From positions 12,715,374-12,767,181 of the forward strand of contig NC_069002.1 in NCBI RefSeq assembly GCF_001194135.2: 51,808 nucleotides of DNA. Direction: 5' to 3'. The notes below the pieces were generated by a model. That model had not been told where the DNA came from. It worked only from the letters and a program-made list of their open reading frames with translations, and ran no database searches. Position numbers and translations under genes: made by a program. The stretch comes from Octopus bimaculoides (taxonomy: Eukaryota). Positions 7,313 through 43,657 of the stretch are shown here, piece by piece; position 1 is the stretch's first letter, and each line of letters starts with the position of its first letter.

Positions 7313-7670
7313 TATATGTATATGTGTGTGTGAGTATGTGTGTGTCTATATACACATATATCTATTTATAAAAGAAAGTAAGAAAATGGAGATATAACAT
7401 TTGATAAAAATTTATTATTTGCAAAAATAAATCATAGTCCCTTACAGCTGTTTCAATTAAGCCTAATGTCAGGTTGAATAAAAACCAAGCAACGTTTTGA
7501 ACCATGAAGAATTTGTACCTAAGTTTTGTAAAGTTTTGAATTTTTTCTAAATATTCCATTTCTTTTTTTTTTTTTTTTTTCTATTGTCTGATATTACAGA
7601 CATAGACTTGCCCAAATGCATCAATAAACTAAAATTAATATTCTTTCCACCGTTGTTACAATCATCTGAA

Positions 7671-8670
7671 ATGGAACTGTCAAAGTGCGATATTCGAGCA
7701 ATTTTGCTGTTCAACTACAAAAAAGGATGTGAAGCAGCTGAAACTGTTCACGATATCAATGGAATGTTTGGCGGGGAGGTGACCAGTGAGTGGTCAGCTC
7801 GAAAATGGTTTAAACGATTTCATAGTGGAGACCTGTCTTGAAGATCATGAACATAGTGAATGCCCATCTGTCATCGATGACGGTCAATTAAAGACCATCA
7901 TTGAGAAAGATCCACATAAAACCGCTCGAGAACTGGCAAAAGAACTTCAAGTGAGCCAGAAAACTACCTGCAACCATTGGCATGTGAACGGAAAATCAAA
8001 AAACTTGATTTGAATGAAAATCAGAAAATGCGTAAATATGAAATTTGCTCATCACTTCTTCTCTGTAACCAGACCGATCCATTTCTTGACCATATTGTAA
8101 CTTGCAATGAAAAGTGGATTCTGTACAATAATAAAAAACATTCCTCATAGTGGATGGACCAAAATGTAGCACCGAAAACTCTGCCTAAACCCGAGCTCTT
8201 CAAAAAGAAGGTTATGGTGACTGTTCGGTGGTGTACTGCTGGACTCATCCACTATAACTTCTTAAAACCCAGAAGAACCATTACTCCTGAAACATATAGC
8301 CATGAAATTGTCAAAATGAACGAAAAATCACAACTTCTCCATCCCAGACTGGTCAACCGAAGAGGGCCAATCATTCTACATGACTACTTGACCATACGTT
8401 TCACTAATGACACTCCAGAAATTGAGGGAACTTGGCTACAAAGTTCTTCCTCACCCAGCTTATTCCCCTGACCTTTCTCCTACTGACTACCACTTTTTCA
8501 AGCACCTTGATGGTTTCCTGTGAGAAAAGGGGTTCAAAATTCAAACTGATGCTGAAAGTCCATTCAAAGAGTTCATCAGCTTCAGAACTCCAGATTTTTA
8601 TGTTACCAGAATAAACAAACTTGTAACTCATTGACAAAAATGTGTTGATTGTAATGGTATTACTTTGATG
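7671..8670 (+). pseudogene. Decayed mariner (DD34D-type) transposase
   Basis: MELSKCDIRAILLFNYKKG...WFKRF; IVTCNEKWILYNN; KKVMVTVRW; YSPDLSPTDYHFF; KCVDCNG. Several frameshifts; WVPHEL motif deleted. Confidence 0.93.
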
Positions 8671-24395: not shown

Positions 24396-27300
24396 CTCTC
24401 TCCAAGCAAATTCGTTACAAAGTAGATGAGAATGGTGAAAATAGCAAGGAGAACAGTTGAGAGAAAGAGAGAGAGAGAGAATTTGCTGTCCACGATCAGG
24501 ATAATATTGAACTCGTGAGATTCCTTCATTGACACTTGGTGGAAGTTCTTCATCAGAAACCCTATATCATCATTTATTTGTATATTGTCCATACGTTTTT
24601 ACCTCATTTGATTTTTGTCGCTTGATATTTGTGTAACCCTCCACACTTGGCGAATTAAAGACACCATCATCACCACCTCCTACCTCCACTATTACTGTGA
24701 CCACCACTGCCATAAAGCACTGCCTCCTAACCTTACCACCCACCACCACCACCATTATCCTCCTACTTCTCCCCAAGCTGCTCAGGCCGTCAACATCAGT
24801 TTACACTTATTTCTTTCATAATTTTCTCCATCAAAATTATTTAGACATTTTTGGAGAGAGAATAGAGGATTAAAAACATCTGGATGTTTCTCTTAATGAG
24901 GGGAGGCACAGTTATTTTTTCCTATTGTCTATATCTAAAGGAGTGGAGGTGCAATGGCCCAGTGGTTAGGGCAGCGGACTTGCGGTCATAGGATCGTGGT
25001 TTCGATTCCCAGACCGGGCATTGTGAGTGTTTATTGAGCGAAAACACCTAAAGCACCACGTGGCTCCGTCAGGGGATGGTGGTGAACCCTGCTGTACTCT
25101 TTCACCACAACTTTCTCTCACTCTTACCTCCTGTTTCTGATGTACCTGTAATTCAAAGGGTCAGCCTTGTCACACTGTGTCACGCTGAATATCCCCGAGA
25201 ACTACGTTAAGGGTACACGTTAATTTCACGAGCTGGCTGTTCCGTTGATCGGATCAACTGGAACCCTCGACGTCGTAAGCGACGGAGTGCCAACAAACAA
25301 TATCTAAAGGATAAATAGTGTTTTAAAAAATATCAACAAATTTGTTGTTTGATGCAGGAAGATTGTTAAGAAGCAGCCATGAATGCAGTTAATAAGGAAC
25401 TAAAGTAGATATAAGTAACACATATACATAGAACCCATTTAAAATTTTGGCCTTGTTACTATGGAAGAGATTCATCATCATCATTATTGTTGTTGTTATT
25501 GTTGCGTCATCATCACTGCCGCCATCATCATCATCATCATTTAATGTTCCTGCTTCCATGCTGGCATGGGTCAGATGGAATTTTTTGAGGCATGAATTTC
25601 TACAGCTGGGTGCCCTTCCTGTCACCAATCCTCACTTGTCTCCGAGTGATGCAATATTTCCTCATGTTTCTCAGGGCAAACTGGAAAAGAACAACATCAC
25701 TTGTATAAAGGTGACATCTCATAATGTTAACCATCACATAATGTCAAGACAGTAGAGGCACAATGTCCCAGTGGTTAGGGCAGCGGACTAGCGGTCGTAG
25801 GATCGCGGTTTCGATTCCCAGACCGGGCACCGTGAGTGTTTAATGAGCGAAAACACTTAAAGCTCCACGAGGCTCCGGCAGAGGATTGTGGCGAACCCTG
25901 CTGTACTCTTCCACCACAACTTTCTCTAACTCTATCTTCCTGTTTCTGTTGTGCCTGTATTTCAAAGGGTCAGCCTTGTCACACTGTGTCACGCTGAATC
26001 TCTCCCGAGAACTACGCTAAGGGTACACATGTCTGTGGAGTGCTCAGCCACTTGCACGTTAATTTCACGAGCAGGCTGTTCCGTTGATCAGATCAACTGG
26101 AACCCTCATCGTCATAACCGACGGAGTCCCAACCACAATGTCAAGACAAGAGTAAAAAAAGTTAAAAAGAGTAAAGACCCCTTTTGTCAGGAATGATCAT
26201 GGGATTGCACCTAGAAAGTTCCCCTCTGAGGTACAAGTCTTGGCAAGGTTGTTTATGGAAGACCAGCAGTTGCCCAAGCATACCAGCCACTTCATGCCAC
26301 TGAAGTTATCCGAGGGAAAGGCAAAGGCCAATACAACTTGGCACCAGTGACATTGCAACTCATTTCTACAGCTGGGTTAACTGGAGCATCGTGAAATAAA
26401 GTGTCTTGCTCAAGAACACAACACTCAGCTCAGTCTGAGAATCAAACTCACTACCTCATGATTGTGTGCCTGACACTTTAACCACTGAGCCATGCACCTT
26501 CCCCCTGCTTGATGCTCTAACCACTGAGCCATGTGCCTTCACATAAAAGTATTGCATGACAAGACATGGGTATACACAAATACATACACATATGTGATGG
26601 GCTTCTTTCAGTTTCCATCTATCGTATCCACTTAAGTGGAGACACGTGGCTTAGAGTGCTGGACTCATGATTGCAAGATTGTGGTTTCAATTCCTGGACA
26701 GGGCAATGCATTGTGTTCTTGAGCAAAATACTTCATTTCGTGTTACTCCAATCCACTCAGCTGGCAAAAATGAGTAATCCTGCTATGGACCGGCACCCCA
26801 TCCAGGTGGGGAGTATCTATCCTATGGAAACCAGGAAACCAGGCCTTATGAGTTGGTAGGACTCAAGAAGGTGACTTTACCTCTTTATATCCACTTAAGA
26901 TGCTTTAGACCAGGCTTTATCTTATAAACGCTTATGAAATTTATACATAAATATTTGCTTAAAATAACATATATTTTTGCATTTATTTATTTAACAGTAT
27001 TTAACAAATAGGTTTATTGTCAATTAAAAAATTTTGATTAAAAAACATAGATAAAATCAAATTGCTTTAGACAACTTGAAGCTATAGCAGAAGACACTTA
27101 TCCAAAGTGTTACACAGTAAGACTGAACCTGAGACCACCTGTTTGGGAAGCAAACTTCTTAACCACACAGCCATGCCTGCATCTATGTAAGAAATTATGA
27201 ATTTTAAATTAATTATGTAATAATTAAAATTATCATTTTCAATATGTTCACAGGTAACAACATAAAACCACCTCCAATTCCTCCAATACGTAAAAAACAT

Positions 27301-28532
27301 AGCGTGCACATTACGAGGGAACAGAATAAATTTAGTTCAGAGGCAAATGTAAGTTTATTTATGGTTGTTGTTGTTGTAGTTTTTAGTCAGCCCCGGTCAG
27401 CTCTGATTGAGAAGATTTAGGATCAAAGATTTTCCAGCCATGACTGTTTCACCTTTTTCTGTACCCAGGATTACAGTATTTAACACATCCTTCCTTTTTC
27501 ACGACAATCGGTTGTGATTTTGGACAAGAGGGTGTGATTTTGTTTCTTATTTCTAGCAGACACTGTCCTCATCCATATGCATCACATGTTTGCACCAGTG
27601 TAGTCTTCTTTCTTGCTCACTGCACTTGATTCCTTTCAGCATATTTATGCTATGTTGTTCATGTACATTGACATTGCACATCAAACAAATCAAGCTCACT
27701 TTATTACTTTCCAGTCTTCTCATGCCCTCTGCATTCAAGGCCCATGTCTCACTACCATGGAGCATTGCAGTTCTAACACAAGCCTCATACAATCTGCCGT
27801 TCACTTTTAGAGAAAGTCCTTTGTTGCCAGCAGTTGTAGCAGCTGCCCTGAAATTTGTCCAGCCCTTTTCTTACTCTGGTTACAATTCTATCAGAGGAAC
27901 TACCTCCCTTGTTAATTACATTTCCAAGCTAACAAAGGCTTTCAGCTACTTCTAGTGAGCCATCTGGGCAACTCAGAGAGTTCATTTCCTGTATGTACTG
28001 CTTCAGTACATCTATCACATACAAAGTTTATGTTCTCTGCGAGTCTGTCTGTGACGCCAACATGTCAGAACTGCTTTTCCCTTTTGAATGCTTCAGCTCC
28101 TTGCTCCTTCTGGAGTCCTTGTTAGCAGCTGTATGTAACCAATAAGAACCAGACTGTATGAGTGGCTGTTCTCCCACTTTGTGGGCACACACACACAAAT
28201 TGTTTATAATGAATGTGATATATGGTGATGGTTAAAAACCCTACAGATATGCAATATAAAACCAAAAAGGAAATATTCAGTTGTCACTAATTGTGACTGA
28301 GGATGCTGGTTAGCACTTATATTGCTAGAAATAGAAGTTTAAAAACCCTTAAAGCTGCAAGGAAGCACTTTCCATATATTGACAGAGGAGATAATGGCGA
28401 GATCACTATACTAATCTAGTTTCGTTTAAAATTAAAGCTCATCAGTAGTGACTACTCCATCGCTGGATGGTTTGGCTAAATCCTGACTGTCAGTATATGG
28501 TATATATATATATATATATATTTATGATGATG

Positions 28533-28578
<46 letters not shown>

Positions 28579-31500
28579 CATCATCATAATTATAAATATA
28601 TAGATATATATTATGTGTATGTATGCACGTGAAAAGATCAAAATAGAAAGGACATACTAATGGATGTAGAAAAATAATTTGTAGGTGCAGAAAAAGACAG
28701 GCATGGCTGGAAAGCTGGAATTCCTTTAATTATAGGTTGTTGTCTCAGTCAGTGTGACCTTGGGCTAAACTGCAATGACAATATTATAAATCAAATTAAC
28801 TGAAAAGCATTGGAGTATCAAACTAAACGTATTTAGTTTCCATTCTTCAAGTGCTCAGTTCAAATTCCACCCGACTTCACTTAACTTTCCAGTGTAAAGG
28901 GTTGATCAGAATCAATTTAATTTTCAATTTATCTCCAAATTTGGGACACTCGTGGCAAGGGACAAAATCATTATTGTTTATATTATTTTCATTTCTTCTC
29001 AGAGCAGACAATTTTCCAAAGATCATAGTAAAGCCCCTGAACATTTAACACAAGCATTATCAAAACTGAGACCAGTTGCAACTAGTTGTAAGGAAGATGA
29101 TGAAGGTTGGTAAATATTTCTTTCCAATTCCTATAAAAGTGCTATCAAGTTTATATTATCTACGGATAATTTTATCTCAGCTCAACCATCAAGCTTGTTA
29201 CTTTGTCCCACTTTTTTTATGGAGGTTTCAACAAAACCAAAGGTCTCCTGAGATCTTAATTGCAAACCGCAATAAATATATGCACCTGTTACCATTTTAT
29301 ATTTCTTTTGTCTGGTACCGAACTCTGGTTTTCAGATGACTGATAGCATAACTAACATCATCCCAATATGCAGACATTGCTTTTCTCTTAGCAATGGTTC
29401 TGATGTGAAAGAAAGGGGTGTGACAAAATAAGCAGAGGAGAGGATGAAACATCTTGCAGTATTTTGGTTCATCTCTTTATGTTGAGAGTTCAAATCCTTT
29501 TCCATCCTTCAGGAATTGATAAATTAAAATATTAACGAGATATTGAAATAGATATAATTGGTAGTTCTTTCTACTCAAAATTTCCTGGTGTAGGCATTGA
29601 ACGAGTACATACACAACAGTTTCATTGTTCTGCACACATTTGGGACAAGCACATTCAATGGAACTCCCACGTCTGTAGAGTTTGCCTCAAAGTGATGGCA
29701 TCCTTTGGTAGCACTGGTTGTCCAAGAAGTTTTGGAAATTATCCATAGTAGTCTCCAATTGGAAAGTCCTCTGAAACAGACTCACCAGTGTGCTTTTGGT
29801 GTTACCCAGAATCTCCTTTAGAACTTTGTTACTAATCCCCTACAGATTGCTAGAGTGGAACCTCTTGCTTGATTAGTTGAGGCCAATCAATGCCTGATAA
29901 CATTCTCAGTGCGTCAGGCACCTCGTCTTGATCTTTGCTTCACACAAGACTGTGGCTCTATCAAGATGAGCTGTACAGAGGTGCACCTCAGAAACAGCAC
30001 CCATGCATGCTCACTGTATATGAATCTTTGCAGGTGGTGCAACATCGACATGTCTGCACATCAGCAGCTATAGTTTACCTAAGTTGCCATGCAGTGGGTT
30101 CCGGCAGCTGATGGATCACCTAATCTGTGAAATGTATCACTTCTACAAGAAACTGAATAACAGACACTCAAGTCTCATCAGGCAGTATCTGGGGCATGAT
30201 AGCCAAGCGCTAAACAATAATGGAGGCAATGTAGGCCACCCTTTCAGAGACAGCTTCCTCTCTACCAATTTCTGGATAAGATTGGCCACTCTGTTCATCA
30301 CCTCAACCCAGTTCTTATCCACCTGAAAGTTGGGACCAAACCAGACACCAAGCAGTTTGATCAGTCCAGCATCTTATGATGGCATCGTCTTTCCTCTCCA
30401 GATGCCCATCCGCAAGCTTGCTGACTTGTTCATATTGATCTGCTGCCATTTCATATCCCTTTAGTATCATACTGACCATCTCCACTTTGGTTGCATCCTA
30501 TATCATAACTATGATGTCATCCATGTATACCAACATGGCCTTCTAAGTTCACGGTTTGAAAGGGATTCCGCTCAACTGATTCAGCTTCCACAGCAGTTGC
30601 TTGAGAGCCAACATATACAGGAGAGGCAAGAGGGAGTAGCCCTGGTTGACCAAACAAGCAATATAAAATGGTTCCAAGAGGTGGCCATTCAGTTTGACCA
30701 CTGAGAAGGTATCACTGTGTATTGCAGCAATCCAGCCTCTGAAAATAGGTTCAGACCTACACAATTTCAGGACAGTTTCCATGTAAATATGGTCAACCTT
30801 ATTGAAAGCTTTTAACTGATCCAAGTTTGATTAGGGCTCTACTGGAGCCAGCTTTGGTTCCAACCTTCTCTGTGATGTACCATATAAGGTGGAGATTGTT
30901 GTGGATGGACCTGTTTGGGATCATCCACATTGCACTTCCCAGACCAGGCTACCAACAACAGGTGCCAACCTTTTCTCTAATATCTTGGCCAAAGTCTTAA
31001 ACTCTGTGTTTAGCAGAGTTATGGGTCAAAAATTTCCTAGCATACCCCCTTTGTCAACAGCATTACTACATCCCAGCTAACAACACTAGACATCTGTCCA
31101 AAAATCAGTAAACAAATCTGAGACAAACTCATAGCATTTGTAGCACAGGCCATTCAAACTGGAGGATTTGTACCCTGTGGAACTGCTCATTGCCTCCAAT
31201 ATTTCAGAAGCTGTTATCAGCTTTTCACAGAATTTTGCATTTACTACTGAAAGCCACAGAAGGTTGTCCAGGTATGAAAAAAATCCACTACCATTGCTGA
31301 TCCATTACCCTCCCCAAACAGTTGCATAAAGTGTTGTTGGAAAGTTATACACACCTGATTGAAACTGAGTAGCATGTGTGTGTCCCAGTCTATCAAAGTC
31401 CTGATTGTGACTCTGTCGTCATGTAACACCTCCTCTGCTTGGGCCCATTGGATAGCTTTGGTTCTCATGTAGAAGTGCACAGGCCTTAACTCTGACAATG

Positions 31501-34500
31501 CAACTTTCATGTTTCACCTCGAAAAGATGGTCAAAGGCATGCTTGCCATTCGCATGTTGGTTGTGATGCCTTTCTTTACCAATTGCCTCTTCTAGATTGC
31601 TAGCTCATTCTCCCTCTGAATTATCTCTGTTGCTAGCTTTTTGCTAAACATATTAATTCTGCTTTACTCACTCTTCAGGCTGCTCCATCACTAGCTTCAT
31701 GAATTACTGCTTAACTAGTACATAAATCTGGTTCCTGTAGCCTTTGCATGCTGGTAGGAATGCACTCAACTTCCAATGAACAAGTCCCTGTCTAGAGTCC
31801 TATATAAATCAACTGAGTACATCACAAATTTGTGGTCTGTGTAGCCAACCAGTTTGAACTGTGGACATCCTATGCCATCCCATTCCCCTGGCACAACAAA
31901 TACTTTATCTAGATATGATCTGGATGACCCACTGTGGATGATCCATATCCATACTGTCACATCAAGGAAATCTAGCTGGTACCTATCAAAAAGTTGGAAA
32001 CAGTTGGTGCAAGTTTCTGAGACTTCTGCACCTCTTTCTCCTATGGGCTAACTCTCCCACAGTCATTCTATACATCTAGAAGACAATTCCACTCACCCAT
32101 TTATACTAAAGGGCAAGATGTTCCAAGGAAACTTTCTAGATGCCTGAAGAAATTAGGCCAATTTGTTCTGGTCTGAGTATAGATGGCCATCAGTCTGAAG
32201 GGTCCACTTTTCCTACCATTCATGTCCAGGATCACCAAATTACCATTCAGGTCCAGGAAGATTCTTTGTATATCAAGGTTCAAGGATTTCCGGAACGGCA
32301 CTGCTACCCCACCACTCAAACTCAACGAACTGCACGATAAGAAAATTTTGTAAGCATTGGAAATGGGTGTCAGGATGTGTGGTGCTCCAGAAATCTTTGT
32401 CTCACTAATGGCTGACACATCTATATCAAGCGACTTGAATTCATTGAGCAAGTGACCCTGCTTCCAAACTAAATCCAGGCCCTGAACGTTTACACAATGT
32501 ATTCTAAGTGTAGCCTTTTAGGCAAGAGATACCGACCCTCTTATTCCTTATTCCTGCCAACATTACCACTTCTACCACCACACCGTATTCCCACAACTGT
32601 TCCCACTACTGTACTCTCACCACCACCACCACCAGCATTATTCTCCTCCAATCCCAGCTGTTCTGATCATTAACATCAGGGATCCATAAATTTACACCAT
32701 TTTTTATAAATTTTCTCCACCAAAATTATCTAGACATTTTTGGTGAGAAAAAGAAGATTAAAAACCTCTGAATGTCTCTCCTAATGAGGGTGGGCACAGT
32801 TATTTTTCCCTATCATTTATATTTAAAGGAGAAATGTTGTTATTAAAAACGTCAACAAACTCGTTTGAGGCAGGAAGATTATTATGGAGCAGCTATGATA
32901 GGCATGAATACAGTTAATAAGGAACTAATGTAGATATAAGTAACACATATATATAGAACTCATTTAAAATTTTGGTCTTGTCAGTATGGAAGAAATTCAT
33001 CATCATCATCATCATCGTTGTTGTTGTTATTGTTGCGTCATTGTCATTTCATCACCACCATAATCATCATCGTCATTTAACATTCACATCCCTATGCTGG
33101 CACGAGTCAGGTGGAATTTTTTTGAGGCATGTTTTTCTATCGCTGGATGCCCTTCATGTCACCAATCCTCACTTGTTTCCATGCAGTGTAATATTTTCCC
33201 ATGATTCTCAGCAAACTGGCAAAGAACAACATTGGTTGTATGAAGGTTACGCTCATTTACAACCATCGCATGATGTCACGACGAACATATATACAAATAT
33301 ATATGCATGCACACACACATACATATACATGAATATAATTGCCTTTTGGATGTACAAATTTTTATATACATCAGTAATGACATTTTCACTGTTAATGCCT
33401 TCTCTGTATATTGCATAAATGTAATTTTTTTTTCCCAAATAAATTGCACTTCATATTCGAGGTTCTGATGAATCTATAGGATGTTATTTAGGCACTCAAC
33501 TACAAGTCCACAACATCTTATTGCAGAAACAGTTGTAAGCAAATGAAGTTCATAACATAACCATCGTTTTCTTGTGTCATATCTTTTTCTTTACATAAAT
33601 ATATGATATGTATATATATATGTGTATCATCATCATTATCATCATTTAACATCCGCTTTCCATGCTAGCATGGGTTGGACGATTTGACTGAGGACTGGTG
33701 AACCAGATGGCTACACCAGGCTCCAGTCTGATTTGGCAGAGTTTCTACAGCTGGATGCCCTTCCTAACGCCAACCACTCCGAGAGTGTAGTGGGTGCTTT
33801 TATGTGCCACCGGCATGAAGGCCAGTCAGGCGGTATATATATGATGGGCATCTTTCAATTTAACGTCTATCATATCCACTTAAGAGGTTTTGGACGACCT
33901 GGGGCTATAACAGAAGACACTTATTCAAAGTGTTGCACCTGAGACCACCTGGTTGTGAAGCAAACTTCTTGACCACATAGCTATGCCTACATCTATGTAA
34001 GAAATTGTGAATATCAAATTAATTATGTAAAAATTATAAATATCATTTTCAATTTATGTTCACAGGTAACTACATAGTACCACCTCCAATTCCTCCATCA
34101 CGTAAAAAACAGAATTTGTCCAAACCAAAGGAGCAGAAAAAAATTAGTAAAGAAGCAAATGTAAGTTTATTTATGGTTGTTGTTGTTGTAGTTATGCCTT
34201 TTAGATATATANNNNNNNNNNNNNNNNNNNNNNNNNNNNNNNNNNNNNNNNNNNNNNNNNNNNNNNNNNNNNNNNNNNNNNNNNNNNNNNNNNNNNNNNN
34301 NNNNNNNNNNNAAAAAGTGTAGGTGGTTAGCTGTGGACTCGAACTCACATCCCCATGATTACGTGTCACAATGCTTTGACTGATTAAGCTAAACTACCCC
34401 ACTACAAATTCCTCTGCAAATTTAAGATGTATAGAAATCTCGCTTTATGAGACGTTATCATATGTTAAATTCAAATTACGACAAACATAAATAAACAAAC

Positions 34501-35872
34501 GAAGTTTGCTGTTAGAAGCGTTGAGATGTCTTATTATTTTCATTTCTTCTCAGGGCAGAAAATTTTCCAGAGATCCTAATAAAGCCACTGAAAATTTATC
34601 ACAAGCAATATCAAAATTGAAACCAGTTGCAACTGGTAAGAATGATAAAGGTTAGTATATATTTCTTTTGATTTCCTATAAAAGTGCTATTGAGTTTATA
34701 TTATCTACAGATAAGTTTCTCTCAGCTCAACCATCAAGCTTGTAACCTTGTCGGAGTTTTTTTCTGGGGGCTTCAACAAAACCAAAGGCCCCTGAGATCT
34801 TAACTGCAAACTTCAATTAAAATATGCACCTGTTACCGTTTTTTATTCTTTTAGTCTGGTACCAAACACCTTGGTTTTCAGACATCTGATTGCTTAACTG
34901 TGACATCATCCTAATATGCAGACACTGTTTTCTACTGAACTAAATAACTCTTAACCCTTTTGATACCAAAATGATTGAGACCGCCGTGGTCTGTGATACA
35001 AACACCCTGTTTTAAAGAGATTAAAACTTCCATCATAATTCCATGTTAGCATATGTTCTATATACCAGCTAGTGGAGGCGCAATGGCCCCGTGGTTAGGG
35101 CAGCGGACTCTCGGTCATAGGATCGCGGTTTCGATTCCCAGACCAGGCGTTGTGAGTGTTTATTGAGCGAAAACCCCTCTAAAAGCCCCACGAGGGTTCT
35201 GGCAGGGGATTGTGGCAAACCCTGCTGTACCCATCAAGTACTGGGGTTGATGCAAATGACTTGTCCCCTCTCTTCAAAATTGCTCGTCCCAAACCCTGCA
35301 ACCGACTGGCATCCCTTTTGGGGGGGAATGTTGTGGCCTCAGTCACTTCTACACTATGAAAATCAGATAACTGGCAATAAGGGATCTGGGTCTCAAGGAA
35401 AATAAAACAGAATAACCCTTATTTTTCTTATCACTAATATCAGTCTTTTCTGTTTTCAGTAGACTATGTGCTTCCAGTAAATAGTGTAAGTATATTTTTA
35501 TTGTTCCTTTTTTTCTCTTACTGGGTTTAATCCTTGAACTATGGCTATGCTGGAGCATGCCTTCAGGCTTTATTTATTTATTTTATAAGCTTTCATGGGT
35601 TCCTGGACAGACAAGTCTGACTATCCCTATTTATTTTCAAAGGATTATATTTTTATGTATTTTTCTCATGACTGAGAACTACATTACCTAGAATCATCAA
35701 CAAACATGGCGCAGGAGTGGCTGTGTGGTAAGTAGCTTGCTTACCAACCACATGGTTCCAGGTTCAGTCCCACTGTGTGGCACCTTGGGCAAGTGTCTTC
35801 TACTATAGCCTCGGGCCGACCAAAGCCTTGTGAATGGATTTGGTAGACGGAAACTGAAAGAAGCCTGTCGTA

Positions 35873-35913
<41 letters not shown>

Positions 35914-38900
35914 NNNNNNNNNNNNNNNNNNNNNNNNNNNNNNNNNNNNNNNNNNNNNNNNNNNNNNNNNNNNNNNNNNNNNNNNNNNNNNNNNNNNNNN
36001 NNNNNNNNNNNNNNNNNNNNNNNNNNNNNNNNNNNNNNNNNNNNNNNNNNNNNNNNNNNNNNNNNNNNNNNNNNNNNNNNNNNNNNNNNNNNNNNNTGAC
36101 AACTGATGCTGGTGTGTTTACGTCCCCGTAACTTAGCGGTTCGGCAAAAAGAGACCGATAGAAGTACTAGGCTTACAAAAGAATAAGTCCTGGGGTTGAT
36201 TTTCTCGACTAAAGGCGGTGCTCCAGCATGGCCGCAGTCAAATGACTGAAACAAGTAAAAGAGTAAAAGAGATAGGTTCTGACATCATTAAAAACATTGT
36301 TACATGAATACAAGTCTGTTTTTCATAATGTAACACTATGTTACTTAGTGAAGGCACATGGTTTAGTGGTTAGGGTGTTTGGTTTACAATCATAGATTCA
36401 TGAGTTCAATTCCCGGTGATGTGTTGTGTCCTTGAGAATGACACTTTATTTCATGTTGCTCCAATCCACTCAGCTGGCAAAAATGAGTAGAACCTGTATT
36501 TAGTCAAGCAATAGATATTTTGAATCTGGTCAATACATTCCATATCCATATATAGTAAACACACACAACAATTTTGTTGTGACTCAATTAGGAAAGAATG
36601 GGCTTGTTTTTTCTTTTGTTTATTTTTAGTTACCTGTAGAACTGGTAATGGTACTACATAAAAAGCATTGGTGCTGGTGCCATGTAAGAAGCACCCAGTA
36701 CACTCTTTAAAGGGACTGGCATTAGAAAGGGCATCCAGCTGTAGAAACCATGCCAAAACAGACTATGGAACCTGGTGCAACTCCCAGCCTTGCCAGCATG
36801 AGAAATGAATTTTAAATAATGTCACTGCTGCTGCTGATGGTGATGCCAATGATGATGATGAGGCATAATCATCGTCATAATATAATTATTTTTGTTTCTT
36901 CTTTCAGAGTAGAAAACATTGCAAAGAGAATACTAAAATCTCGGAAAGTTTAGCTCTGGCACTGTCCAAACGGATTGGTTCCGATGAAGAGGATGGAGGT
37001 TGGTAAAGGTTTCCTTTCATTTCACCTAAAGACACATAATCTCCCATTAACCCATTTGTGTGTGTTACTGACTATCGGGTTCCTATTGACCTGAAAATGT
37101 GAACCAAACCAAACCCCACTCCGCCTTCCCCTGAAATGTCTTATTTTTCGAATGTCAAACCGGACCCGATTCAAAGAGAGTTAGAACCCACTAGACTTCT
37201 ATTCCAGGCAATATAGTCTTTAAATTGAAGGGTCATCAAAGTAGATGTAACATATCGAGTGTCAGAAATTATTATGTGCCACAAGGAAACATCACATTCA
37301 GAAACTCTCTCCTTCACACTTCAAGAGATAAAAAAAAATCAAATGAAGAGCCTAAGATTTATCCGAGGTCAAATTATTCATGTATGACAAGTATGGAAGT
37401 AAATAGTGAAGCCGTTTTCACGTGATAAGCGATTACACACACATCTCTGTTTTATATATAGTATAGATATATATATATACAAACATATATAAAGGTTAAT
37501 GAAGCTTTTCCTTTACACATTGTAAAAAGCTCTGCCTCTCCAATTTTTTGTTATTTTACTTTAAATTTGAACTCTTTAGACATTTATATATTGTTTTGTT
37601 TCTTCTATCTAATATTCATCTTTTCTACTTTCCATAGACTATGTGGTTCCTGTAAATAAAGTAAGTACATTCACAAAAGTATATAGATGTTTATGTAAAT
37701 CTTTGTATATGGATATGTGTATATATGCGTATATGTATGCATGTGAGCATGTGTGTGTGTGTGTGGCATGTAAAAAGCACCCATTACACTTTTGGAGTGG
37801 TTGGCATTAGGAAGGGCATCCAGGTGTAGAAACCCTGCCAAATCAGACTGGAACTTGGTTCAGCTCTCCGGCTTACCAGTTCTCGTCAAACTCTAACCCA
37901 TGCCAGCATGGAAAATGGACGTTAAATAATGATGATGGTGATGATGATGATATATATATATATATATATATATATANNNNNNNNNNNNNNNNNNNNNNNN
38001 NNNNNNNNNNNNNNNNNNNNNNNNNNNNNNNNNNNNNNNNNNNNNNNNNNNNNNNNNNNNNNNNNNNNNNNNNNNNNNNNNNNNNNNNNNNNNNNNNNNN
38101 NNNNNNNNNNNNNNNNNNNNNNNNNNNNNNNNNNNNNNNNNNNNNNNNNNNNNNNNNNNNNNNNNNNNNNNNNNNNNNNNNNNNNNNNNNNNNNNNNNNN
38201 NNNNNNNNNNNNNNNNNNNNNNNNNNNNNNNNNNNNNNNNNNNNNNNNNNNNNNNNNNNNNNNNNNNNNNNNNNNNNNNNNNNNNNNNNNNNNNNNNNNN
38301 NNNNNNNNNNNNNNNNNNNNNNNNNNNNNNNNNNNNNNNNNNNNNNNNNNNNNNNNNNNNNNNNNNNNNNNNNNNNNNNNNNNNNNNNNNNNNNNNNNNN
38401 NNNNNNNNNNNNNNNNNNNNNNNNNNNNNNNNNNNNNNNNNNNNNNNNNNNNNNNNNNNNNNNNNNNNNNNNNNNNNNNNNNNNNNNNNNNNNNNNNNNN
38501 NNNNNNNNNNNNNNNNNNNNNNNNNNNNNNNNNNNNNNNNNNNNNNNNNNNNNNNNNNNNNNNNNNNNNNNNNNNNNNNNNNNNNNNNNNNNNNNNNNNN
38601 NNNNNNNNNNNNNNNNNNNNNNNNNNNNNNNNNNNNNNNNNNNNNNNNNNNNNNNNNNNNNNNNNNNNNNNNNNNNNNNNNNNNNNNNNNNNNNNNNNNN
38701 NNNNNNNNNNNNNNNNNNNNNNNTATATATATATATATATATATAAATAATTTTCTTCATTTTTGCTTCAGTCCACCTGGCAGCAGTCAAAAGGTAAGTT
38801 GAAAATAAATTTCTCCTCTCAATAGAATTATTTTATTCTTTTATTCTGTTGAAGGCTTCCCTCATTGGGTTGCCACCATGTGATACTGTGATCTTCAAAG

Positions 38901-41900
38901 GTTTTTTTTTTCATTATTGATCAATCAACCACATTTCAGTCTCATAGTTTCTTTTTATTTGATTTGGTTAAGTCTTAGCTTTTTTTTTTTTTTTTTTTGG
39001 CTTAAAGGCAAACTCGTTGAAGCACTAGTTTACACACACTCTCACGTAGACAAGCACAAATGTACTCATACATAAATACAAACACACACACAAATACTGA
39101 CAGACTCGCATACAAATACAGACTGACAGACATACTATACACTAACAAATGCAGACACTCACTCAAGTATACACATATACACATGAACATACACACAATT
39201 ACAGACAAACACACACACATGTAAATATATACACATGCACAAATTGAACAATACACCAACATTACAATAGTCTTAATTAATGCAACAGTATAACAATAGT
39301 GACTCAACAATGTGAAAACTGATAAATAATTCAATAATATTTGCAATAAATTTAATCCTTTAGCATTTAAACCAACTATGTCCAAGCAAAATATTCTACC
39401 TGCTCTATGTTCAGACTGGCCAGATCCAGTCTCTCACACCTACTCTACCATGTTATTTCTAAAATTAGACAACAACATTGTTGAAATCTCAAAGCAACAA
39501 GATAATACAGGATTAATTCAATGCAATGTGAATAAATTAGCATTACATTTGATAGAGTAATCTGAAGTCTAAAGAGTTAAAGTTTAAAATAAAACAAACA
39601 AAGCAAATTATCTGGTTTCTCTTTTCAGATTCATTAATCTCACCTATGACACACAAAGAAATGTCTGTAAGAAAGAAGTTACCAATTCCACCATTGTTCA
39701 ATACTTCAAATTATAATGGTGAGTAGTTCTACCTCCTTCTTTTTTTCATTTCTTTAGTTCTTTCCTGCTTTTTTCTTCCTTTATTTCAGAAGTCCTATGA
39801 TTTTTACCTTTATATAAATGGTATTTCCTTTCTTGAGGTTTTCCCCATGACTTTTCTCCCAAAACAGAATTATGATAAACATCTTTTAACATCTATAACA
39901 CTATTGTTGTTGGCATGCCGTCGCTTACAACGTCGAGGGTTCCAGTTGATCTGATCAACGGAACAGCCTGCTCGTGGAATTAACATGCATGTGACTGAGC
40001 ACTCCACAGACACGTGTACCCTTAACGTAGTTCTCGGGGATATTCAGCGTGACATAGTGTGACAAGGCTGGCCCTTTGAATTACAGGCACAACAGAAACA
40101 GGAAGAAAGAGTGAGAGAAAGTTGTGGTGAAAGAGTACAGCGGGTTCACCACCATCCCCTGCTGGAGCCTCATGGAGTTTTAGGTGTTTTCGCTCAATAA
40201 ATACTCACAACGCCAGTCTGGGAATCGAAACCGTGATCCTATGACCAAAACTCCGCTGCCCTAACCACTGGGCCATTGTGCCTCCTATAACACTATATTG
40301 AACTGTAAAACATCAAGTCATTCCAGTTTAATTCTTTTACCTTAATGTTTATTAGCTTAAAAGCTGCACTCTATGTGGACTTCACTCTAACTTCTGCAGC
40401 AGGACAATTGGGCTTGCAGCCCAAAACTAAAGAGAGCTAAATAACATGACTATAATACATTTATAATGATTCTATGTCCCGGCGATGTTTGACCAGAGGT
40501 TAAGGATGGATGAGAATTAATTCTGTACTATTCTATTGTTCCAGTCACAAGTTGAATTCCAACTGTTAGCGAATTTGTCACAAAATTCTTATCTTGATGT
40601 AAAATTAACAAAGCAAATGTCATTTATCTCCCGCTTGATCTCTGACTTTATATAACAAATGCCAACCAAGATGGTGTGACTCAGCCTGCTAGAAATAGTA
40701 ATCCAAATGCTTTTAAATCAGATCCCAATGCTGGATGTTCAAAAACCAAATGAAGAGCAGATTTTCAATTCCGGGATCATCCTGATTCCAAAAAGGTATA
40801 TGTCTATGTAGAGCAAATATAGACTGAGATATAGGGGTCCCAGACAGACAGAATTTCACTTTTAATATTATAGATTATTTTGTTTTGATAAATAGTTGTT
40901 GTTATTGTTGTTGATGTTATTATTGTTATTATTACTTATCTATTTTTTCAAGAGCTTATTTTTGTAATGTGTATTATCTTTTTCATTTATTTTTGTCTCT
41001 TTTTCATTGTTTTTTTTTTTCCATTTATTTTTATTTTCTAGAAAGTTCACATCAACAAGATCCCCAGACCGTAAGTTGTTGATTCTGTATCTCCTTCTCT
41101 CCCTCCATGCATATTATAACATTCATAACAGTTATATTATATAAACAGTAGAATCACAGAAACTACTGTTCTGACCCATCACAAACTACCATCAAAATCC
41201 ATAATTAATATCAACCCAATAGCTACTGATAAAAGCAAGTTTTCAATGTTTTTACCTAAGACCTAATTGGCCAGCTGCTTGCTGATGTCATTAATCTCAA
41301 ACAAAATCTTATTTAGATGTTATTTTTACATCTGAATGCAGTGATTTGGGTGACACAGCTGCTAGAGCCATGTCTGTCAACCATTTTTCACCTATGGGCG
41401 CCTTTGGTTCTTAATCTTACTCAGATGGACTGTCCCTAGCCCTTCAGTGTTTAAAAACATCATATATTTTTATAATTAAATATTATTAGTGATTGTATGA
41501 AAAAAAAGTTGCTAAAATATTCCATGAATTGTAGATGCATAACAAATTTATTGCAGATAAAAATTTTAACAACAAAATCTTATATGGACCCCAGTTGAGA
41601 ACCACTGTTCAAGAGGGTTCAAGATCATCATCATCGTTTAACGTTCACTTTCCGTGCTAGCATGGGTTGGACGATATGACTGAGGACTGGTGAGACCAGA
41701 TGGCTACACCAGGCTCCAATCTGATTTGGCAGAGTTTCTACAACTGGATGCTCTTCCTAACGCCAACCACTCCGAGAGTATAGTGGGTGCTTTTACATGC
41801 CACCGGCACGAAGGCCAGTCAGGCGGTACTGGCAACGGCCACGCTCAAAATGGTGTATTTTACGTGCCACCTGCACAGGAGACAATCCAGCGGCACTGGC

Positions 41901-43112
41901 AACGATCTCAAATCACTAATGTATGTTATATGGTATTTGATATATCTGTGTCTGTCAATATATTTCAAATACATGATACTGGCCACTCTGAGTTATTTCC
42001 CTTTGTTCTTTTTTGCTTGCATTATGCATATTACCTAGGCCATAAACATGTTCTACTCCTTTTTATATAAACCTAAGTTTCTTGGCTACTAGATGTAATG
42101 TCGGGCAATTGTTGCACTGATGATGGCTATCGGGCCAGAAACATGTGTACAAATGTCATCTTATCTCCAGATAATTGTGTCCTCTTCCTTTACGACATGT
42201 CAACTGTGGAGCATTCTTGATTTTTATTATCTCCCCTTTTCATGTGAAGCTGGCCTTAATTGCCGTTTGGTAATTATGATTCATCCTCTAGAAGTGAAAA
42301 TAATTTTAATAAATCAAGAAGAATTTATGTTGTATGGTATTTAATATGCCTGTATTTATCTATGTTATTCAAATACAAGCTACTGACTGCTCTGCTATTT
42401 CTTTATGTCATATTTGTTTAAATTATGCAAAATACCAACATCACAAGTGTGTTCTACTCTTTTATATATATATAACAATACAATAACCTAAAAATAATTG
42501 AAGAAAGTCATTTAAAAATATTTTTATCAAATCTTTTCCAGTTTGAATGGTTCCATAGCAAAAGCAATCGGGAAGTAATCAAAGAACAGTTACTTCAACA
42601 TGAAATGGTATTTATTGGTTTTCTTGGTTTCTCTCCCCACCCCCATCTACTTACAGTTGACAACTAAGTGGAATTGAATGTTAGAATTTCTAATAAAATT
42701 TTGCTGATTTAAATAAGGTGAATGTATGCTTAAAACATTTACTTCCCAACCATATGGTTTTGGGGGTTCAATCCCACTGCTGGGTGCCTTCTGCTATGGT
42801 CTTAGGTCATCACTGCTTGGTAAGTGTAATTTCATAGACAGTAACTGTATGGAAGCCCATTGTGTGTGTAGTTTGCTGCCTGTTCCGTTAAGGGAAGATC
42901 AATGAAAAAGTATTCCATCCAGTTAGGGATAAATATCATCTAATGTACACAGTATAAAGATATGAACTACTTATAGTTTCTTGCTGTGAAGACATGTGGC
43001 TTGGCAGGTCTCTGGAATCACAAGGCATGTTACAAAAACCTGCCTAGACACTTGTCTTCAGAGCAAGAAACTGTTAGTAACTCTTATCTTTATACTATAT
43101 GCATAAAATGAC

Positions 43113-43144
<32 letters not shown>

Positions 43145-43657
43145 CATACACACACACATCCGTCCCTACATTCCGAGTTCAAATTCCGCCAAAGGTTGAC
43201 TTCACCATGCATCGGGGTCAGTAAAATAAGTACCAGTTGAACACTGAGGTCAATGTAATCAACTTACTGGTTCCCCCACTCCACTCCTGAAATTGCTGAC
43301 CTTGTGTCAGAATTTGAAACCAATATTATGACAATATCATTTGGGAAAAAATTGTAATTTTATAATGCTATTTTCTTCCTTTCTATATAGGATGGAATGT
43401 TTGCCGTTCGAAAAAGCAACCAAAAAAGCAGTTTACATAGTTATTCTTTGACATTTTACCATAAAGGCCAAATATATAACTTCCCAATACGCACTCGAGT
43501 ATCAGATATGAAATTTGCCCTGGGCTACGAGAAACCAAATGAACCTGTGAGTAATTTTATATTATATATATTTCCCGAGCGTCCAATAACACTATCTGTA
43601 TCACGTCCTCACCTTGTTGTTTTTTTGTTGTTGTTGCTTTTTGTGTTTTTTTGAACT

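What the first reader, a model, noticed from the sequence alone, without database searches (positions are those of the whole stretch)
27254..37660. Adaptor grown by serial duplication of a phase-symmetric two-exon phosphotyrosine cassette
Order is A1-B1-A2-B2-C1-B3-C2. Every B exon (phase 0-to-1; SR/GR...E.L..A(L/I)SK...acidic end) is followed by a phase 1-to-0 exon starting with (D/N)Y(I/V)(V/L)P, so each junction assembles an acidic-YxxP site typical of Syk-family substrates. The pair is frame-neutral, so it can be duplicated or skipped freely. There are two layers: a young A/B duplication with alignable introns, and an older B/C one visible only in exons. This is a tunable docking-site array, the best candidate for an undescribed system in the window.
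Basis: partly seen in the sequence, partly recalled or inferred. Interest (0 to 1): 0.78.

Follow-up and report, generated by a model that had tools for sequence, protein, structure and literature searches.

The report
Octopus BLNK-like adaptor, duplicated docking exons
The seven small exons are real and form the linker of an octopus signalling adaptor of the vertebrate BLNK/SLP-76 family, in which tyrosine and proline docking motifs were multiplied by tandem exon duplication and can be skipped in frame; this is an unstudied variation on a known protein family, not a new system.

Summary
All seven exons (A1 B1 A2 B2 C1 B3 C2) have AG/GT sites and the stated phases. Spliced together they reproduce RefSeq isoform X1 of Octopus bimaculoides LOC106881179 exactly. 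The gene ends in an SH2 domain. Its closest relatives are mollusc "lymphocyte cytosolic protein 2-like / B-cell linker-like" proteins and vertebrate BLNK. Both gaps named in the finding lie in introns. The gapless O. vulgaris locus has the same seven exons and no hidden copies. Both duplications predate the O. bimaculoides/O. vulgaris split. RefSeq isoforms X3 and X4 already skip A1+B1 in frame. Cuttlefish RNA assemblies differ by one 48-nt exon encoding DDG-NYLLPV. A pipefish BLNK microexon has the same size and phase as C1, so the C exon is probably ancient rather than new. A1 has no tyrosine in any octopus, so the A exons are mainly proline-rich SH3-ligand exons. The B2 end is not acidic. 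The cassette region evolves near neutrality (dN/dS about 1, against 0.13 for the SH2 domain). Phosphorylation, binding partners and any "tuning" remain inferred. Verdict: a lineage-specific variant of a known adaptor family, of moderate interest.

The parts
16508..16527 (+). Upstream exon (xWSDSHF, phase 1->0) that is missing from the RefSeq model
   Evidence: It has AG/GT sites. It matches the SDDGWSDDHF exon of O. sinensis, O. vulgaris and Argonauta.
19812..19896 (+). Exon Ea (SDVESSGNEMDDGYSAQRYLQLNEVKFP, phase 0->1). The RefSeq start codon is at 19839.
22797..22829 (+). Exon Eb (EKRPTSPALPPR, 33 nt, phase 1->1). It is skipped in RefSeq isoforms X2 and X4.
   Evidence: It is tandemly duplicated in O. 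vulgaris.
27254..27348 (+). Exon A1 (NNIKPPPIPPIRKKHSVHITREQNKFSSEAN, phase 1->0). It is proline-rich and has no tyrosine.
29003..29105 (+). Exon B1 (SRQFSKDHSKAPEHLTQALSKLRPVATSCKEDDE+G, phase 0->1)
34066..34160 (+). Exon A2 (NYIVPPPIPPSRKKQNLSKPKEQKKISKEAN, phase 1->0)
34212..34311 (.). Assembly gap inside intron A2>B2
   Evidence: The homologous O. vulgaris intron is 5.8 kb and holds no cassette exon.
34554..34650 (+). Exon B2 (GRKFSRDPNKATENLSQAISKLKPVATGKNDK+G, phase 0->1). Its end is not acidic.
35460..35485 (+). Microexon C1 (xDYVLPVNS, 26 nt, phase 1->0)
   Evidence: A pipefish BLNK microexon has the same size and phase.
35914..36096 (.). Assembly gap inside intron C1>B3
36908..36998 (+). 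Exon B3 (SRKHCKENTKISESLALALSKRIGSDEEDG+G, phase 0->1)
37638..37660 (+). Microexon C2 (xYVVPVNK, 23 nt, phase 1->0). It is 100% identical in O. vulgaris.
38772..38793 (+). Exon D1 (STWQQSK, phase 0->1)
39629..39718 (+). Exon D2 (DSLISPMTHKEMSVRKKLPIPPLFNTSNYN, phase 1->1)
41042..41070 (+). Exon D3 (ESSHQQDPQT, phase 1->0)
42542..42607 (+). SH2 exon 1 (FEWFHSKSNREVIKEQLLQHEM)
43391..43546 (+). SH2 exon 2 (DGMFAVRKS...EKPNEP)
44029..44136 (+). SH2 exon 3 with the stop codon

Best explanation
The region is the central linker of the Octopus bimaculoides gene LOC106881179. This gene is the cephalopod orthologue of the SLP-76/BLNK family of cytoplasmic scaffold adaptors.

The family builds its unstructured docking region from many small exons, typically with one tyrosine or proline motif per exon. 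In the octopus lineage two tandem segmental duplications multiplied this layout. The older one duplicated a B exon plus a YxxPV microexon, giving B2-C1 and B3-C2. The later one duplicated a proline-rich A exon plus a B exon, giving A1-B1 and A2-B2. Both events happened before O. bimaculoides and O. vulgaris diverged.

The result is three (D/N)Y(I/V)(V/L)P sites interleaved with two PPIPPxR(K)K SH3-ligand motifs and three conserved B-exon motifs (L..A.SKL(K/R)PVA in B1 and B2; B3 keeps only L..ALSK in O. bimaculoides, though the full motif survives in O. vulgaris B3).

Every adjacent A/C+B pair is a multiple of 3 nt, so pairs can be added, lost or skipped without breaking the frame. The annotated isoforms skip A1+B1.

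Inferred, not shown: the tyrosines are phosphorylated by a Syk-type kinase and recruit SH2 proteins. pY-V-V-P and pY-I-V-P resemble the BLNK sites that bind PLC-gamma. If so, the number of included cassettes would set the docking valency of the scaffold.
For: - Exon model: it is verified and identical to RefSeq X1.
- SH2 domain: Pfam PF00017, E = 1.3e-10. The best single-domain PDB match is the BLNK SH2 structure 2eo6 at 41 bits.
- Relatives: searching 1.84 billion representatives with the SH2 exon returns cephalopod orthologues, then Haliotis 'lymphocyte cytosolic protein 2-like / SH2D6-like', Lottia and Mizuhopecten proteins, and fish BLNK. A profile search returns O. sinensis 'B-cell linker protein-like' at 82% identity, Haliotis and Mytilus LCP2-like proteins with SAM plus SH2, and vertebrate BLNK only.
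- SH2 intron positions (..M|DGMF.. and ..EP|AF..) are shared with pipefish BLNK and with Lottia.
- Pipefish BLNK carries a 26-nt phase 1->0 microexon, DFYEVPDQE, preceded by an exon that ends in phase 1 with G. This is the same size, phase and tyrosine/proline register as C1.
- Duplication layers and their age. Orthologous intron flanks are 92-99% identical and paralogous flanks 84-92%.
- O. vulgaris has the same seven exons in a gapless assembly.
- Skipping: X3 and X4 lack exactly A1+B1, 198 nt.
- RNA evidence in a relative: Sepia esculenta transcript assemblies differ by one exact 48-nt block encoding NYLLPVFQRQSPGQVK after ..KDDG (the species comes from PMC11917092).
- Mytilus edulis has at least 49 predicted isoforms that differ by tyrosine-motif blocks.
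- BLNK YxxP sites are Syk targets that dock Vav, BTK and PLC-gamma2 (PMC9994718, PMC1971124).
Against: - No phosphorylation or binding data exist for any mollusc member in the searched literature.
- The cassette region evolves at dN/dS 0.99 (bootstrap 0.55-2.07) between O. bimaculoides and O. vulgaris, against 0.13 for the SH2 domain. Most cassette residues are therefore unconstrained. Only short motifs and the C exons (96-100% identical) look conserved.
- The B2-C1 site lacks the acidic context.
- A1 has no tyrosine.
- The cephalopod proteins lack the SAM domain of SLP-76.
- The octopus isoforms are RefSeq predictions, and I could not inspect their RNA support. No octopus transcript contigs were in the collection.
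- Argonauta has no recognisable B/C array.
Confidence: 0.75

Rival explanations
1. Neutral exon duplication in a disordered linker. The copies are tolerated because they are frame-neutral, but they add no regulated function. There would be no 'tunable array', only drift in a fast-evolving spacer.
For: - dN/dS is about 1 for the cassette region and for paralogue comparisons.
- Exons A2, B2 and B3 diverge at least as fast as, and B2 and B3 faster than, their flanking introns.
- Argonauta does without the B/C array and instead expanded a 27-nt repeat inside the A-like exon.
- The B2-C1 site has lost its acidic context.
Against: - The C microexons are 96-100% identical between species.
- The Y-hydrophobic-hydrophobic-P-V motif is shared with Sepia and, as I recall the human sequence, with BLNK DYVVPV.
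- The motif cores (PPIPP.R.K and SKL+PVA) persist in all copies and all species.
- All copies keep intact splice sites in two species.
Confidence: 0.2
2. Assembly artefact. The repeated exons, or their number, result from mis-assembly around the gaps (collapsed or falsely duplicated haplotypes).
For: - Three gaps sit in or next to the array.
- O. bimaculoides introns here are about 2.6 to 15 times shorter than in O. vulgaris.
- O. sinensis isoforms X1 and X2 contain an extra A-B pair that is 100% identical at protein level to its neighbour, which is typical of false duplication or a very recent event.
Against: - The O. bimaculoides copies are only 62-86% identical to each other.
- The same seven exons, in the same order, occur in the gapless O. 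vulgaris assembly.
Confidence: 0.04
3. A different kind of SH2 adaptor, for example SHB/SHD-like or a Cas-like substrate, rather than a member of the SLP-76/BLNK family.
For: - There is no SAM domain and no BLNK-type N-terminus.
- PLC-gamma2 gives the best whole-sequence PDB E-value, because two of its SH2 domains both match.
- YxxP arrays also occur in Cas and SHD proteins (from my own knowledge).
Against: - The best single SH2 match is BLNK.
- All vertebrate hits in the profile search are BLNK.
- The mollusc orthologues carry the SLP-76 architecture of SAM plus SH2.
- SH2 intron positions and the tyrosine microexon are shared with fish BLNK.
Confidence: 0.05

Closest known systems
BLNK (SLP-65/BASH), the vertebrate B-cell linker protein
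   Same: - C-terminal SH2 domain, the best structural-database match.
- No SAM domain.
- An acidic/proline-rich linker with several YxxP sites, which in BLNK are phosphorylated by Syk and dock Vav, BTK and PLC-gamma2 (PMC9994718).
- The DYVVPV motif. The human sequence is recalled from memory, and only its SH2 part aligned.
- A 26-nt phase 1->0 tyrosine microexon and the same SH2 intron positions in pipefish BLNK.
- NCBI names the O. sinensis orthologue 'B-cell linker protein-like'.
   Different: - SH2 identity is only about 35%.
- The N-terminus is unrelated.
- The octopus tyrosine sites are multiplied by exon duplication and interleaved with B exons that have no recognisable vertebrate counterpart.
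- The pipefish microexon is constitutive in all listed isoforms.
- There is no functional evidence in molluscs.
SLP-76 (LCP2) and the mollusc 'lymphocyte cytosolic protein 2-like' proteins (Haliotis, Mytilus, Mizuhopecten, Lottia)
   Same: - An orthologous SH2 domain with the PLPK tail.
- An acidic tyrosine-motif linker made of small cassette exons.
- Many predicted isoforms that differ by tyrosine-motif blocks.
- Tyrosine microexons in Lottia.
   Different: - The gastropod and bivalve proteins keep the N-terminal SAM domain (PF00536/PF07647). The cephalopod proteins do not.
- Their motifs are of the YE(D/E)P type and not Y(V/I)(V/L)P.
- They have no A/B/C array.
Tandem exon duplication in general, and YxxP substrate arrays such as the p130Cas substrate domain
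   Same: It works like a multivalent phosphotyrosine docking array, and it grew by duplication of symmetric exons. Both are established phenomena (from my own knowledge).
   Different: Cas arrays lie largely within large exons and belong to an unrelated family. Here each site sits on its own microexon paired with a spacer exon.

Membership tests
SLP-76/BLNK/CLNK adaptor family | A single C-terminal SH2 domain with intact phosphotyrosine-binding arginines | tested here: met
   PF00017 covers residues 266-349 of the model, E = 1.3e-10. FEWFHSKSNRE and FAVRKS retain the alphaA and betaB arginines (read from the sequence). The domain is the last one before the stop codon.
SLP-76/BLNK/CLNK adaptor family | The SH2 domain is closer to family members than to other SH2 families | tested here: met
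   The best single-domain PDB hit is BLNK 2eo6 at 41.2 bits, against 28.2 bits for the PLC-gamma2 N-terminal SH2. In the profile search the vertebrate hits are named BLNK or unnamed, and the mollusc hits are mostly named LCP2-like or BLNK-like. No formal phylogeny was made.
SLP-76/BLNK/CLNK adaptor family | A linker upstream of the SH2 domain with multiple YxxP tyrosines in an acidic context | tested here: met
   EDDEGNYIVP, KVDYVLP and EEDGDYVVP, plus DDGYSAQ further upstream. Two of the three cassette sites are acidic.
SLP-76/BLNK/CLNK adaptor family | Those tyrosines are phosphorylated by Syk/ZAP-70-type kinases and recruit SH2 effectors | not testable with these tools
   This needs kinase assays, phosphoproteomics or pull-downs. 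No mollusc data were found.
SLP-76/BLNK/CLNK adaptor family | A proline-rich region with SH3-ligand motifs | tested here: met
   At motif level only: PALPPR (Eb), PPIPPIR and PPIPPSR (A1, A2), and KKLPIPP (D2) fit the PxxPxR, PxxxPR and KxxPxxP consensus patterns (sequence; the consensus patterns are from my own knowledge).
SLP-76/BLNK/CLNK adaptor family | N-terminal SAM domain (SLP-76 and the invertebrate members) or N-terminal leucine zipper (BLNK) | tested here: not met
   Full-length O. sinensis, O. vulgaris, Argonauta and Sepia orthologues carry only PF00017 and no SAM sequence. There was no SAM hit in the window with an SLP-76 N-terminus recalled from memory. Vertebrate BLNK and CLNK also lack SAM, so this does not exclude membership. 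A leucine zipper was not tested.
SLP-76/BLNK/CLNK adaptor family | Shared gene structure | tested here: met
   The two SH2 intron positions and the 26-nt phase 1->0 tyrosine microexon are shared with pipefish BLNK. The SH2 introns are also shared with Lottia.
Tandem exon duplication array | Adjacent exons of equal phase class with significant sequence similarity that extends into the introns | tested here: met

The most novel reading that the evidence does not exclude
The 23-26-nt acidic-Y-x-x-P microexon would be a bilaterian-old, independently splice-able docking module of the SLP-76/BLNK family, homologous to the BLNK DYVVPV site. Cephalopods would use it as a regulated switch: alternatively included in cuttlefish, duplicated to two or three copies in Octopus, possibly still varying in copy number in O. 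sinensis, and replaced in Argonauta by repeats inside an exon. Scaffold valency for PLC-gamma-type effectors would then be set by splicing and copy number. That would give a natural series for testing how docking-site number shapes signalling in an invertebrate immune or neural pathway.
Probability: 0.25. Interest if true: 0.6.

Novelty: new variant of a known kind. Interest (0 to 1): 0.4.

Why it matters
BLNK and SLP-76 are central scaffolds of vertebrate antigen-receptor signalling. Their invertebrate relatives are annotated but unstudied.

This locus shows the docking region being built and rebuilt from exon-sized modules. One tyrosine microexon is probably shared with vertebrates, and it was duplicated in octopuses. 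The neighbouring proline-rich exon was also duplicated; its two copies differ by a single AAC/TAC change (NNIKP against NYIVP), which either made or removed a YxxP site. Annotated or observed skipping of such units occurs in two cephalopod lineages.

If the sites are functional, the locus offers a natural allelic and isoform series for asking how the number of docking sites controls scaffold output. If they are not, it is a clean example of near-neutral exon shuffling in a disordered linker.

Practically, the work also corrects the gene model, which is truncated at the N-terminus, and gives a family assignment to an 'uncharacterized protein'.

Tried and rejected
- Word-indexed protein searches with the cassette peptide and with the C-terminal 164 aa found only an old truncated model (P0001) or nothing. 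The exhaustive representative search and a profile search were needed instead.
- The look-up of encoding contigs returned no record for P0001, P0067 or P0015. It returned no DNA for the 113-kb O. sinensis gene. The extra O. sinensis cassette copies could therefore not be checked at DNA level.
- The newer O. bimaculoides assembly is the same sequence with the same gaps, so it could not close them.
- My exact spliced-mapping script failed on pipefish and then timed out. Exon boundaries in pipefish and Lottia were read from tblastn hits plus the splice-site context instead.
- A first SH2 dN/dS estimate used wrong exon coordinates. It was redone.
- No further A, B or C copies were found elsewhere in the window.
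- No SAM exon was found in the window. I did not run a Pfam scan of the upstream translations.
- Rejected: that the array is chance ORF noise, that it is an assembly artefact in O. bimaculoides, and that the A exons are primarily phosphotyrosine exons.

Full report
**What the window is**

The window is AT-rich eukaryotic DNA with nine N-gaps. It is identical to Octopus bimaculoides assembly GCA_001194135.2, chromosome CM046622.1, and has the same gaps.

**The observation**

I located the seven exons by their boundary sequences.
- All seven have a polypyrimidine/AG acceptor and a GT donor.
- Lengths for A1, B1, A2, B2, C1, B3 and C2 are 95, 103, 95, 97, 26, 91 and 23 nt.
- B exons run phase 0->1. 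A and C exons run phase 1->0.
- Any neighbouring A/C+B pair is therefore a multiple of three.
- The three junctions read EDDEG|NYIVP, GKNDKV|DYVLP and SDEEDG|DYVVP.

- The B2 end is not acidic.
- A1 reads NNIKP and has no tyrosine.
- Part of the alignable intron upstream of A1 and A2 is a dispersed SINE-like repeat.

**The gene**

- An old truncated model (P0001) already joined A1-B1-A2 and then ran into the intron at the first gap.
- Downstream on the same strand I found three exons that encode an SH2 domain and end at a stop codon at 44134-44136.
- Pfam gives PF00017 at E = 1.3e-10.
- The best single-domain match among solved structures is the BLNK SH2 domain 2eo6, at 41 bits.
- An exhaustive search with the 52-residue SH2 exon returned P0002, which is 100% identical.
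- Together with its cluster members, P0002 is RefSeq 'uncharacterized protein LOC106881179', isoforms X1-X4.
- My 16-exon model, all with AG/GT sites, contains X1 residue for residue.
- X2 skips the 33-nt exon Eb. X3 skips A1+B1 (198 nt). X4 skips Eb, A1 and B1.
- The exons are therefore co-spliced in the reference annotation, and in-frame skipping of one cassette pair is already annotated.
- I could not inspect the RNA evidence behind these predictions.
- The RefSeq start is an internal methionine. An upstream exon at 16508-16527 matches the conserved SDDGWSDDHF exon of other cephalopods.

**Family assignment**

The next-best hits to the SH2 exon are:
- Argonauta hians (76% identity);
- a set of transcript contigs that one SRA run ties to Sepia esculenta (58%, PMC11917092);
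- Haliotis 'lymphocyte cytosolic protein 2-like / SH2D6-like', Lottia and Mizuhopecten proteins;
- fish BLNK.

A profile built from five mollusc sequences finds:
- O. sinensis 'B-cell linker protein-like' at 82% identity;
- O. vulgaris;
- Haliotis and Mytilus LCP2-like proteins carrying SAM plus SH2;
- among vertebrates, only BLNK.

Other family-level evidence:
- The two intron positions inside the SH2 domain are shared with pipefish BLNK and with Lottia.
- A sea-star BLNK-like protein with SAM and SH2 domains has been reported (PMC11593052).
- The cephalopod proteins lack SAM, as vertebrate BLNK does.

I conclude that the gene is a member of the SLP-76/BLNK adaptor family. In this family, YxxP tyrosines in an acidic/proline-rich linker are phosphorylated by Syk and dock Vav, BTK and PLC-gamma2 (PMC9994718, PMC1971124).

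**The gaps**

- Both gaps named in the finding lie inside introns: A2>B2 and C1>B3.
- A third gap, 37977-38723, lies in intron C2>D1.
- Frame continuity depends on splice phases, which are consistent, and not on the unread letters.
- The gapless O. vulgaris locus (L009) has exactly A1 B1 A2 B2 C1 B3 C2, with no extra cassette exon in the homologous introns.
- O. bimaculoides introns here are about 2.6 to 15 times shorter than their O. vulgaris counterparts, so the gap sizes are underestimated.
- A hidden copy in O. bimaculoides cannot be formally excluded.

**Duplication history**

| Comparison | Result |
|---|---|
| A1-B1 flanks vs A2-B2 flanks, O. bimaculoides | 82-84% over 318 and 410 nt |
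| A1-B1 flanks vs A2-B2 flanks, O. vulgaris | 81-83% over 334 and 515 nt |
| B1 vs B3 | 67-72% over about 150-160 nt |
| C1 vs C2 | 79-82% over 73 nt |
| Orthologous intron flanks | 92-99% |
| Paralogous intron flanks | 84-92% |

- Because orthologous flanks are more alike than paralogous flanks, both duplications predate the split of the two species.
- The simplest history is A-B-C, then A-B-C-B-C, then A-B-A-B-C-B-C.
- O. vulgaris B3 keeps the LSKLKPVAHG segment, which O. bimaculoides B3 has partly lost. This makes the homology of B3 with B1 and B2 plain.

**Variation among relatives**

- O. sinensis isoforms X1 and X2 each contain one more A-B pair, identical at protein level to a neighbouring pair and in different combinations. 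X3 has the seven-exon layout.
- The O. sinensis gene is 15.5 kb longer than the O. vulgaris gene.
- This pattern fits either a very recent tandem duplication or a false duplication in that assembly. I could not obtain the DNA.
- Argonauta has no recognisable B or C exons. It has one long A-like exon expanded internally by a 27-nt unit repeated 4.4 times (PPxPPSYxA).
- Sepia transcript assemblies come in two forms that differ by one exact 48-nt block. The block encodes NYLLPVFQRQSPGQVK after ..KDDG. This is RNA-level evidence that a YxxPV exon is alternatively included in a decapodiform.
- Mytilus edulis has at least 49 predicted isoforms that differ by tyrosine-motif blocks.
- Cassette number is therefore neither constant nor ancient across molluscs. 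The modular design, however, is a property of the whole family.

**Origin of the C exon**

- Pipefish BLNK has a 26-nt, phase 1->0 microexon, DFYEVPDQE. It is preceded by an exon that ends in phase 1 with G.
- C1 has the same length and phase, with tyrosine and proline at the same codons.
- Lottia has a 29-nt phase 1->0 microexon, YIKYNPNNQ, after ..SDDG, and a 22-nt microexon, DVYIDPD.
- The tyrosine microexon therefore looks inherited, and the octopus novelty is its duplication.
- In pipefish the microexon is present in all listed isoforms.

**The A exons**

- A1 is NNI(K/I)PPPIPPIRKK in all three Octopus species.
- Sepia has DNIPKPPARRKK at the corresponding place.
- A2 is NYIVPPPIPPSR(K/S)KK.
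- The two copies differ at this position by AAC against TAC.
- Sepia suggests that tyrosine was gained in A2. The SYIAPP repeats of Argonauta leave loss in A1 possible.
- Either way, the A exons are primarily proline-rich SH3-ligand-type exons. This is a motif-level inference.

**Selection**

- Between O. bimaculoides and O. vulgaris the cassette region has dN/dS 0.99 (bootstrap 0.55-2.07).
- The SH2 exons have dN/dS 0.13 (bootstrap 0.04-0.28).
- C1 and C2 are 96% and 100% identical, and the short motif cores persist.
- The region behaves like a disordered linker in which only short linear motifs are constrained.

**Mechanism**

Shown:
- the exon structure and phases;
- co-splicing in the RefSeq annotation;
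- the duplication history;
- the family relationship;
- skipping, from annotation in Octopus and from RNA assemblies in Sepia.

Inferred from what is known of the family:
- phosphorylation by a Syk-type kinase;
- recruitment of SH2 effectors, with PLC-gamma-type the most likely given pY-V-V-P and pY-I-V-P;
- SH3 binding by the proline motifs;
- dependence of signalling output on cassette number.

**Novelty**

- The gene and its family are known, and tandem exon duplication is a common process.
- I found no paper on mollusc members of this family, or on this exon-cassette architecture, in the searched literature.
- I classify it as a new variant of a known kind, of moderate interest.

Noticed in passing
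window 16508-16527 and upstream: The RefSeq models start at an internal Met (19839). An unannotated exon (xWSDSHF, AG/GT sites, phase 1->0) matches the conserved SDDGWSDDHF exon of other cephalopods. The still earlier 'IYQDMS' exon was not found and may lie in gap 15341-15859.
   Followed up: partly
window 22797-22829; L009 about 49.5 kb and 50.6 kb: Exon Eb (33 nt, phase 1->1, PALPPR) is single in O. bimaculoides. In O. vulgaris it is tandemly duplicated 1.1 kb apart, and both copies are used in the O. vulgaris and O. sinensis proteins. This is a second frame-neutral exon duplication in the same gene.
   Followed up: partly
window 34161-38771 compared with L009 66872-89095: Introns around the three gaps are about 2.6 to 15 times shorter in O. 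bimaculoides than in the gapless O. vulgaris assembly, so the stated gap lengths are probably large underestimates.
   Followed up: partly
L008 19208-19650 (Argonauta hians): The A-like exon is expanded by a 27-nt unit repeated 4.4 times (PPxPPSYxA) and by a 21-nt unit repeated 2.4 times, all inside one exon. It is followed by a (GTT)n array that resembles the ggttgttgttgttg just after the octopus A-exon donors. This is a different way of multiplying a similar motif.
   Followed up: partly
window 7551-8520 (+): Remnant of a Mos1/mariner-type transposase (HTH_48, E = 2.6e-14; Transposase_1, E = 1.4e-16).
   Followed up: yes
window about 30549-32451 (-): A decayed non-LTR retrotransposon fragment in intron B1>A2. 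The RVT_1 match (E = 9e-4) is below the Pfam cut-off. It accounts for much of the 5-kb spacing between the two A-B units.
   Followed up: partly
O. sinensis proteins P0069 and P0044: Isoforms X1 and X2 are both 483 aa but use different extra pairs (A1-B-A1-B-A2 against A1-B-A2-B-A2), and the extra copies are identical at protein level. This is either a very recent duplication of about 15 kb or a false duplication in the assembly.
   Followed up: partly
L015 8723-8752 and 9873-9896 (Lottia gigantea): The limpet orthologue also places tyrosine motifs on microexons: 29 nt for YIKYNPNNQ and 22 nt for DVYIDPD.
   Followed up: partly
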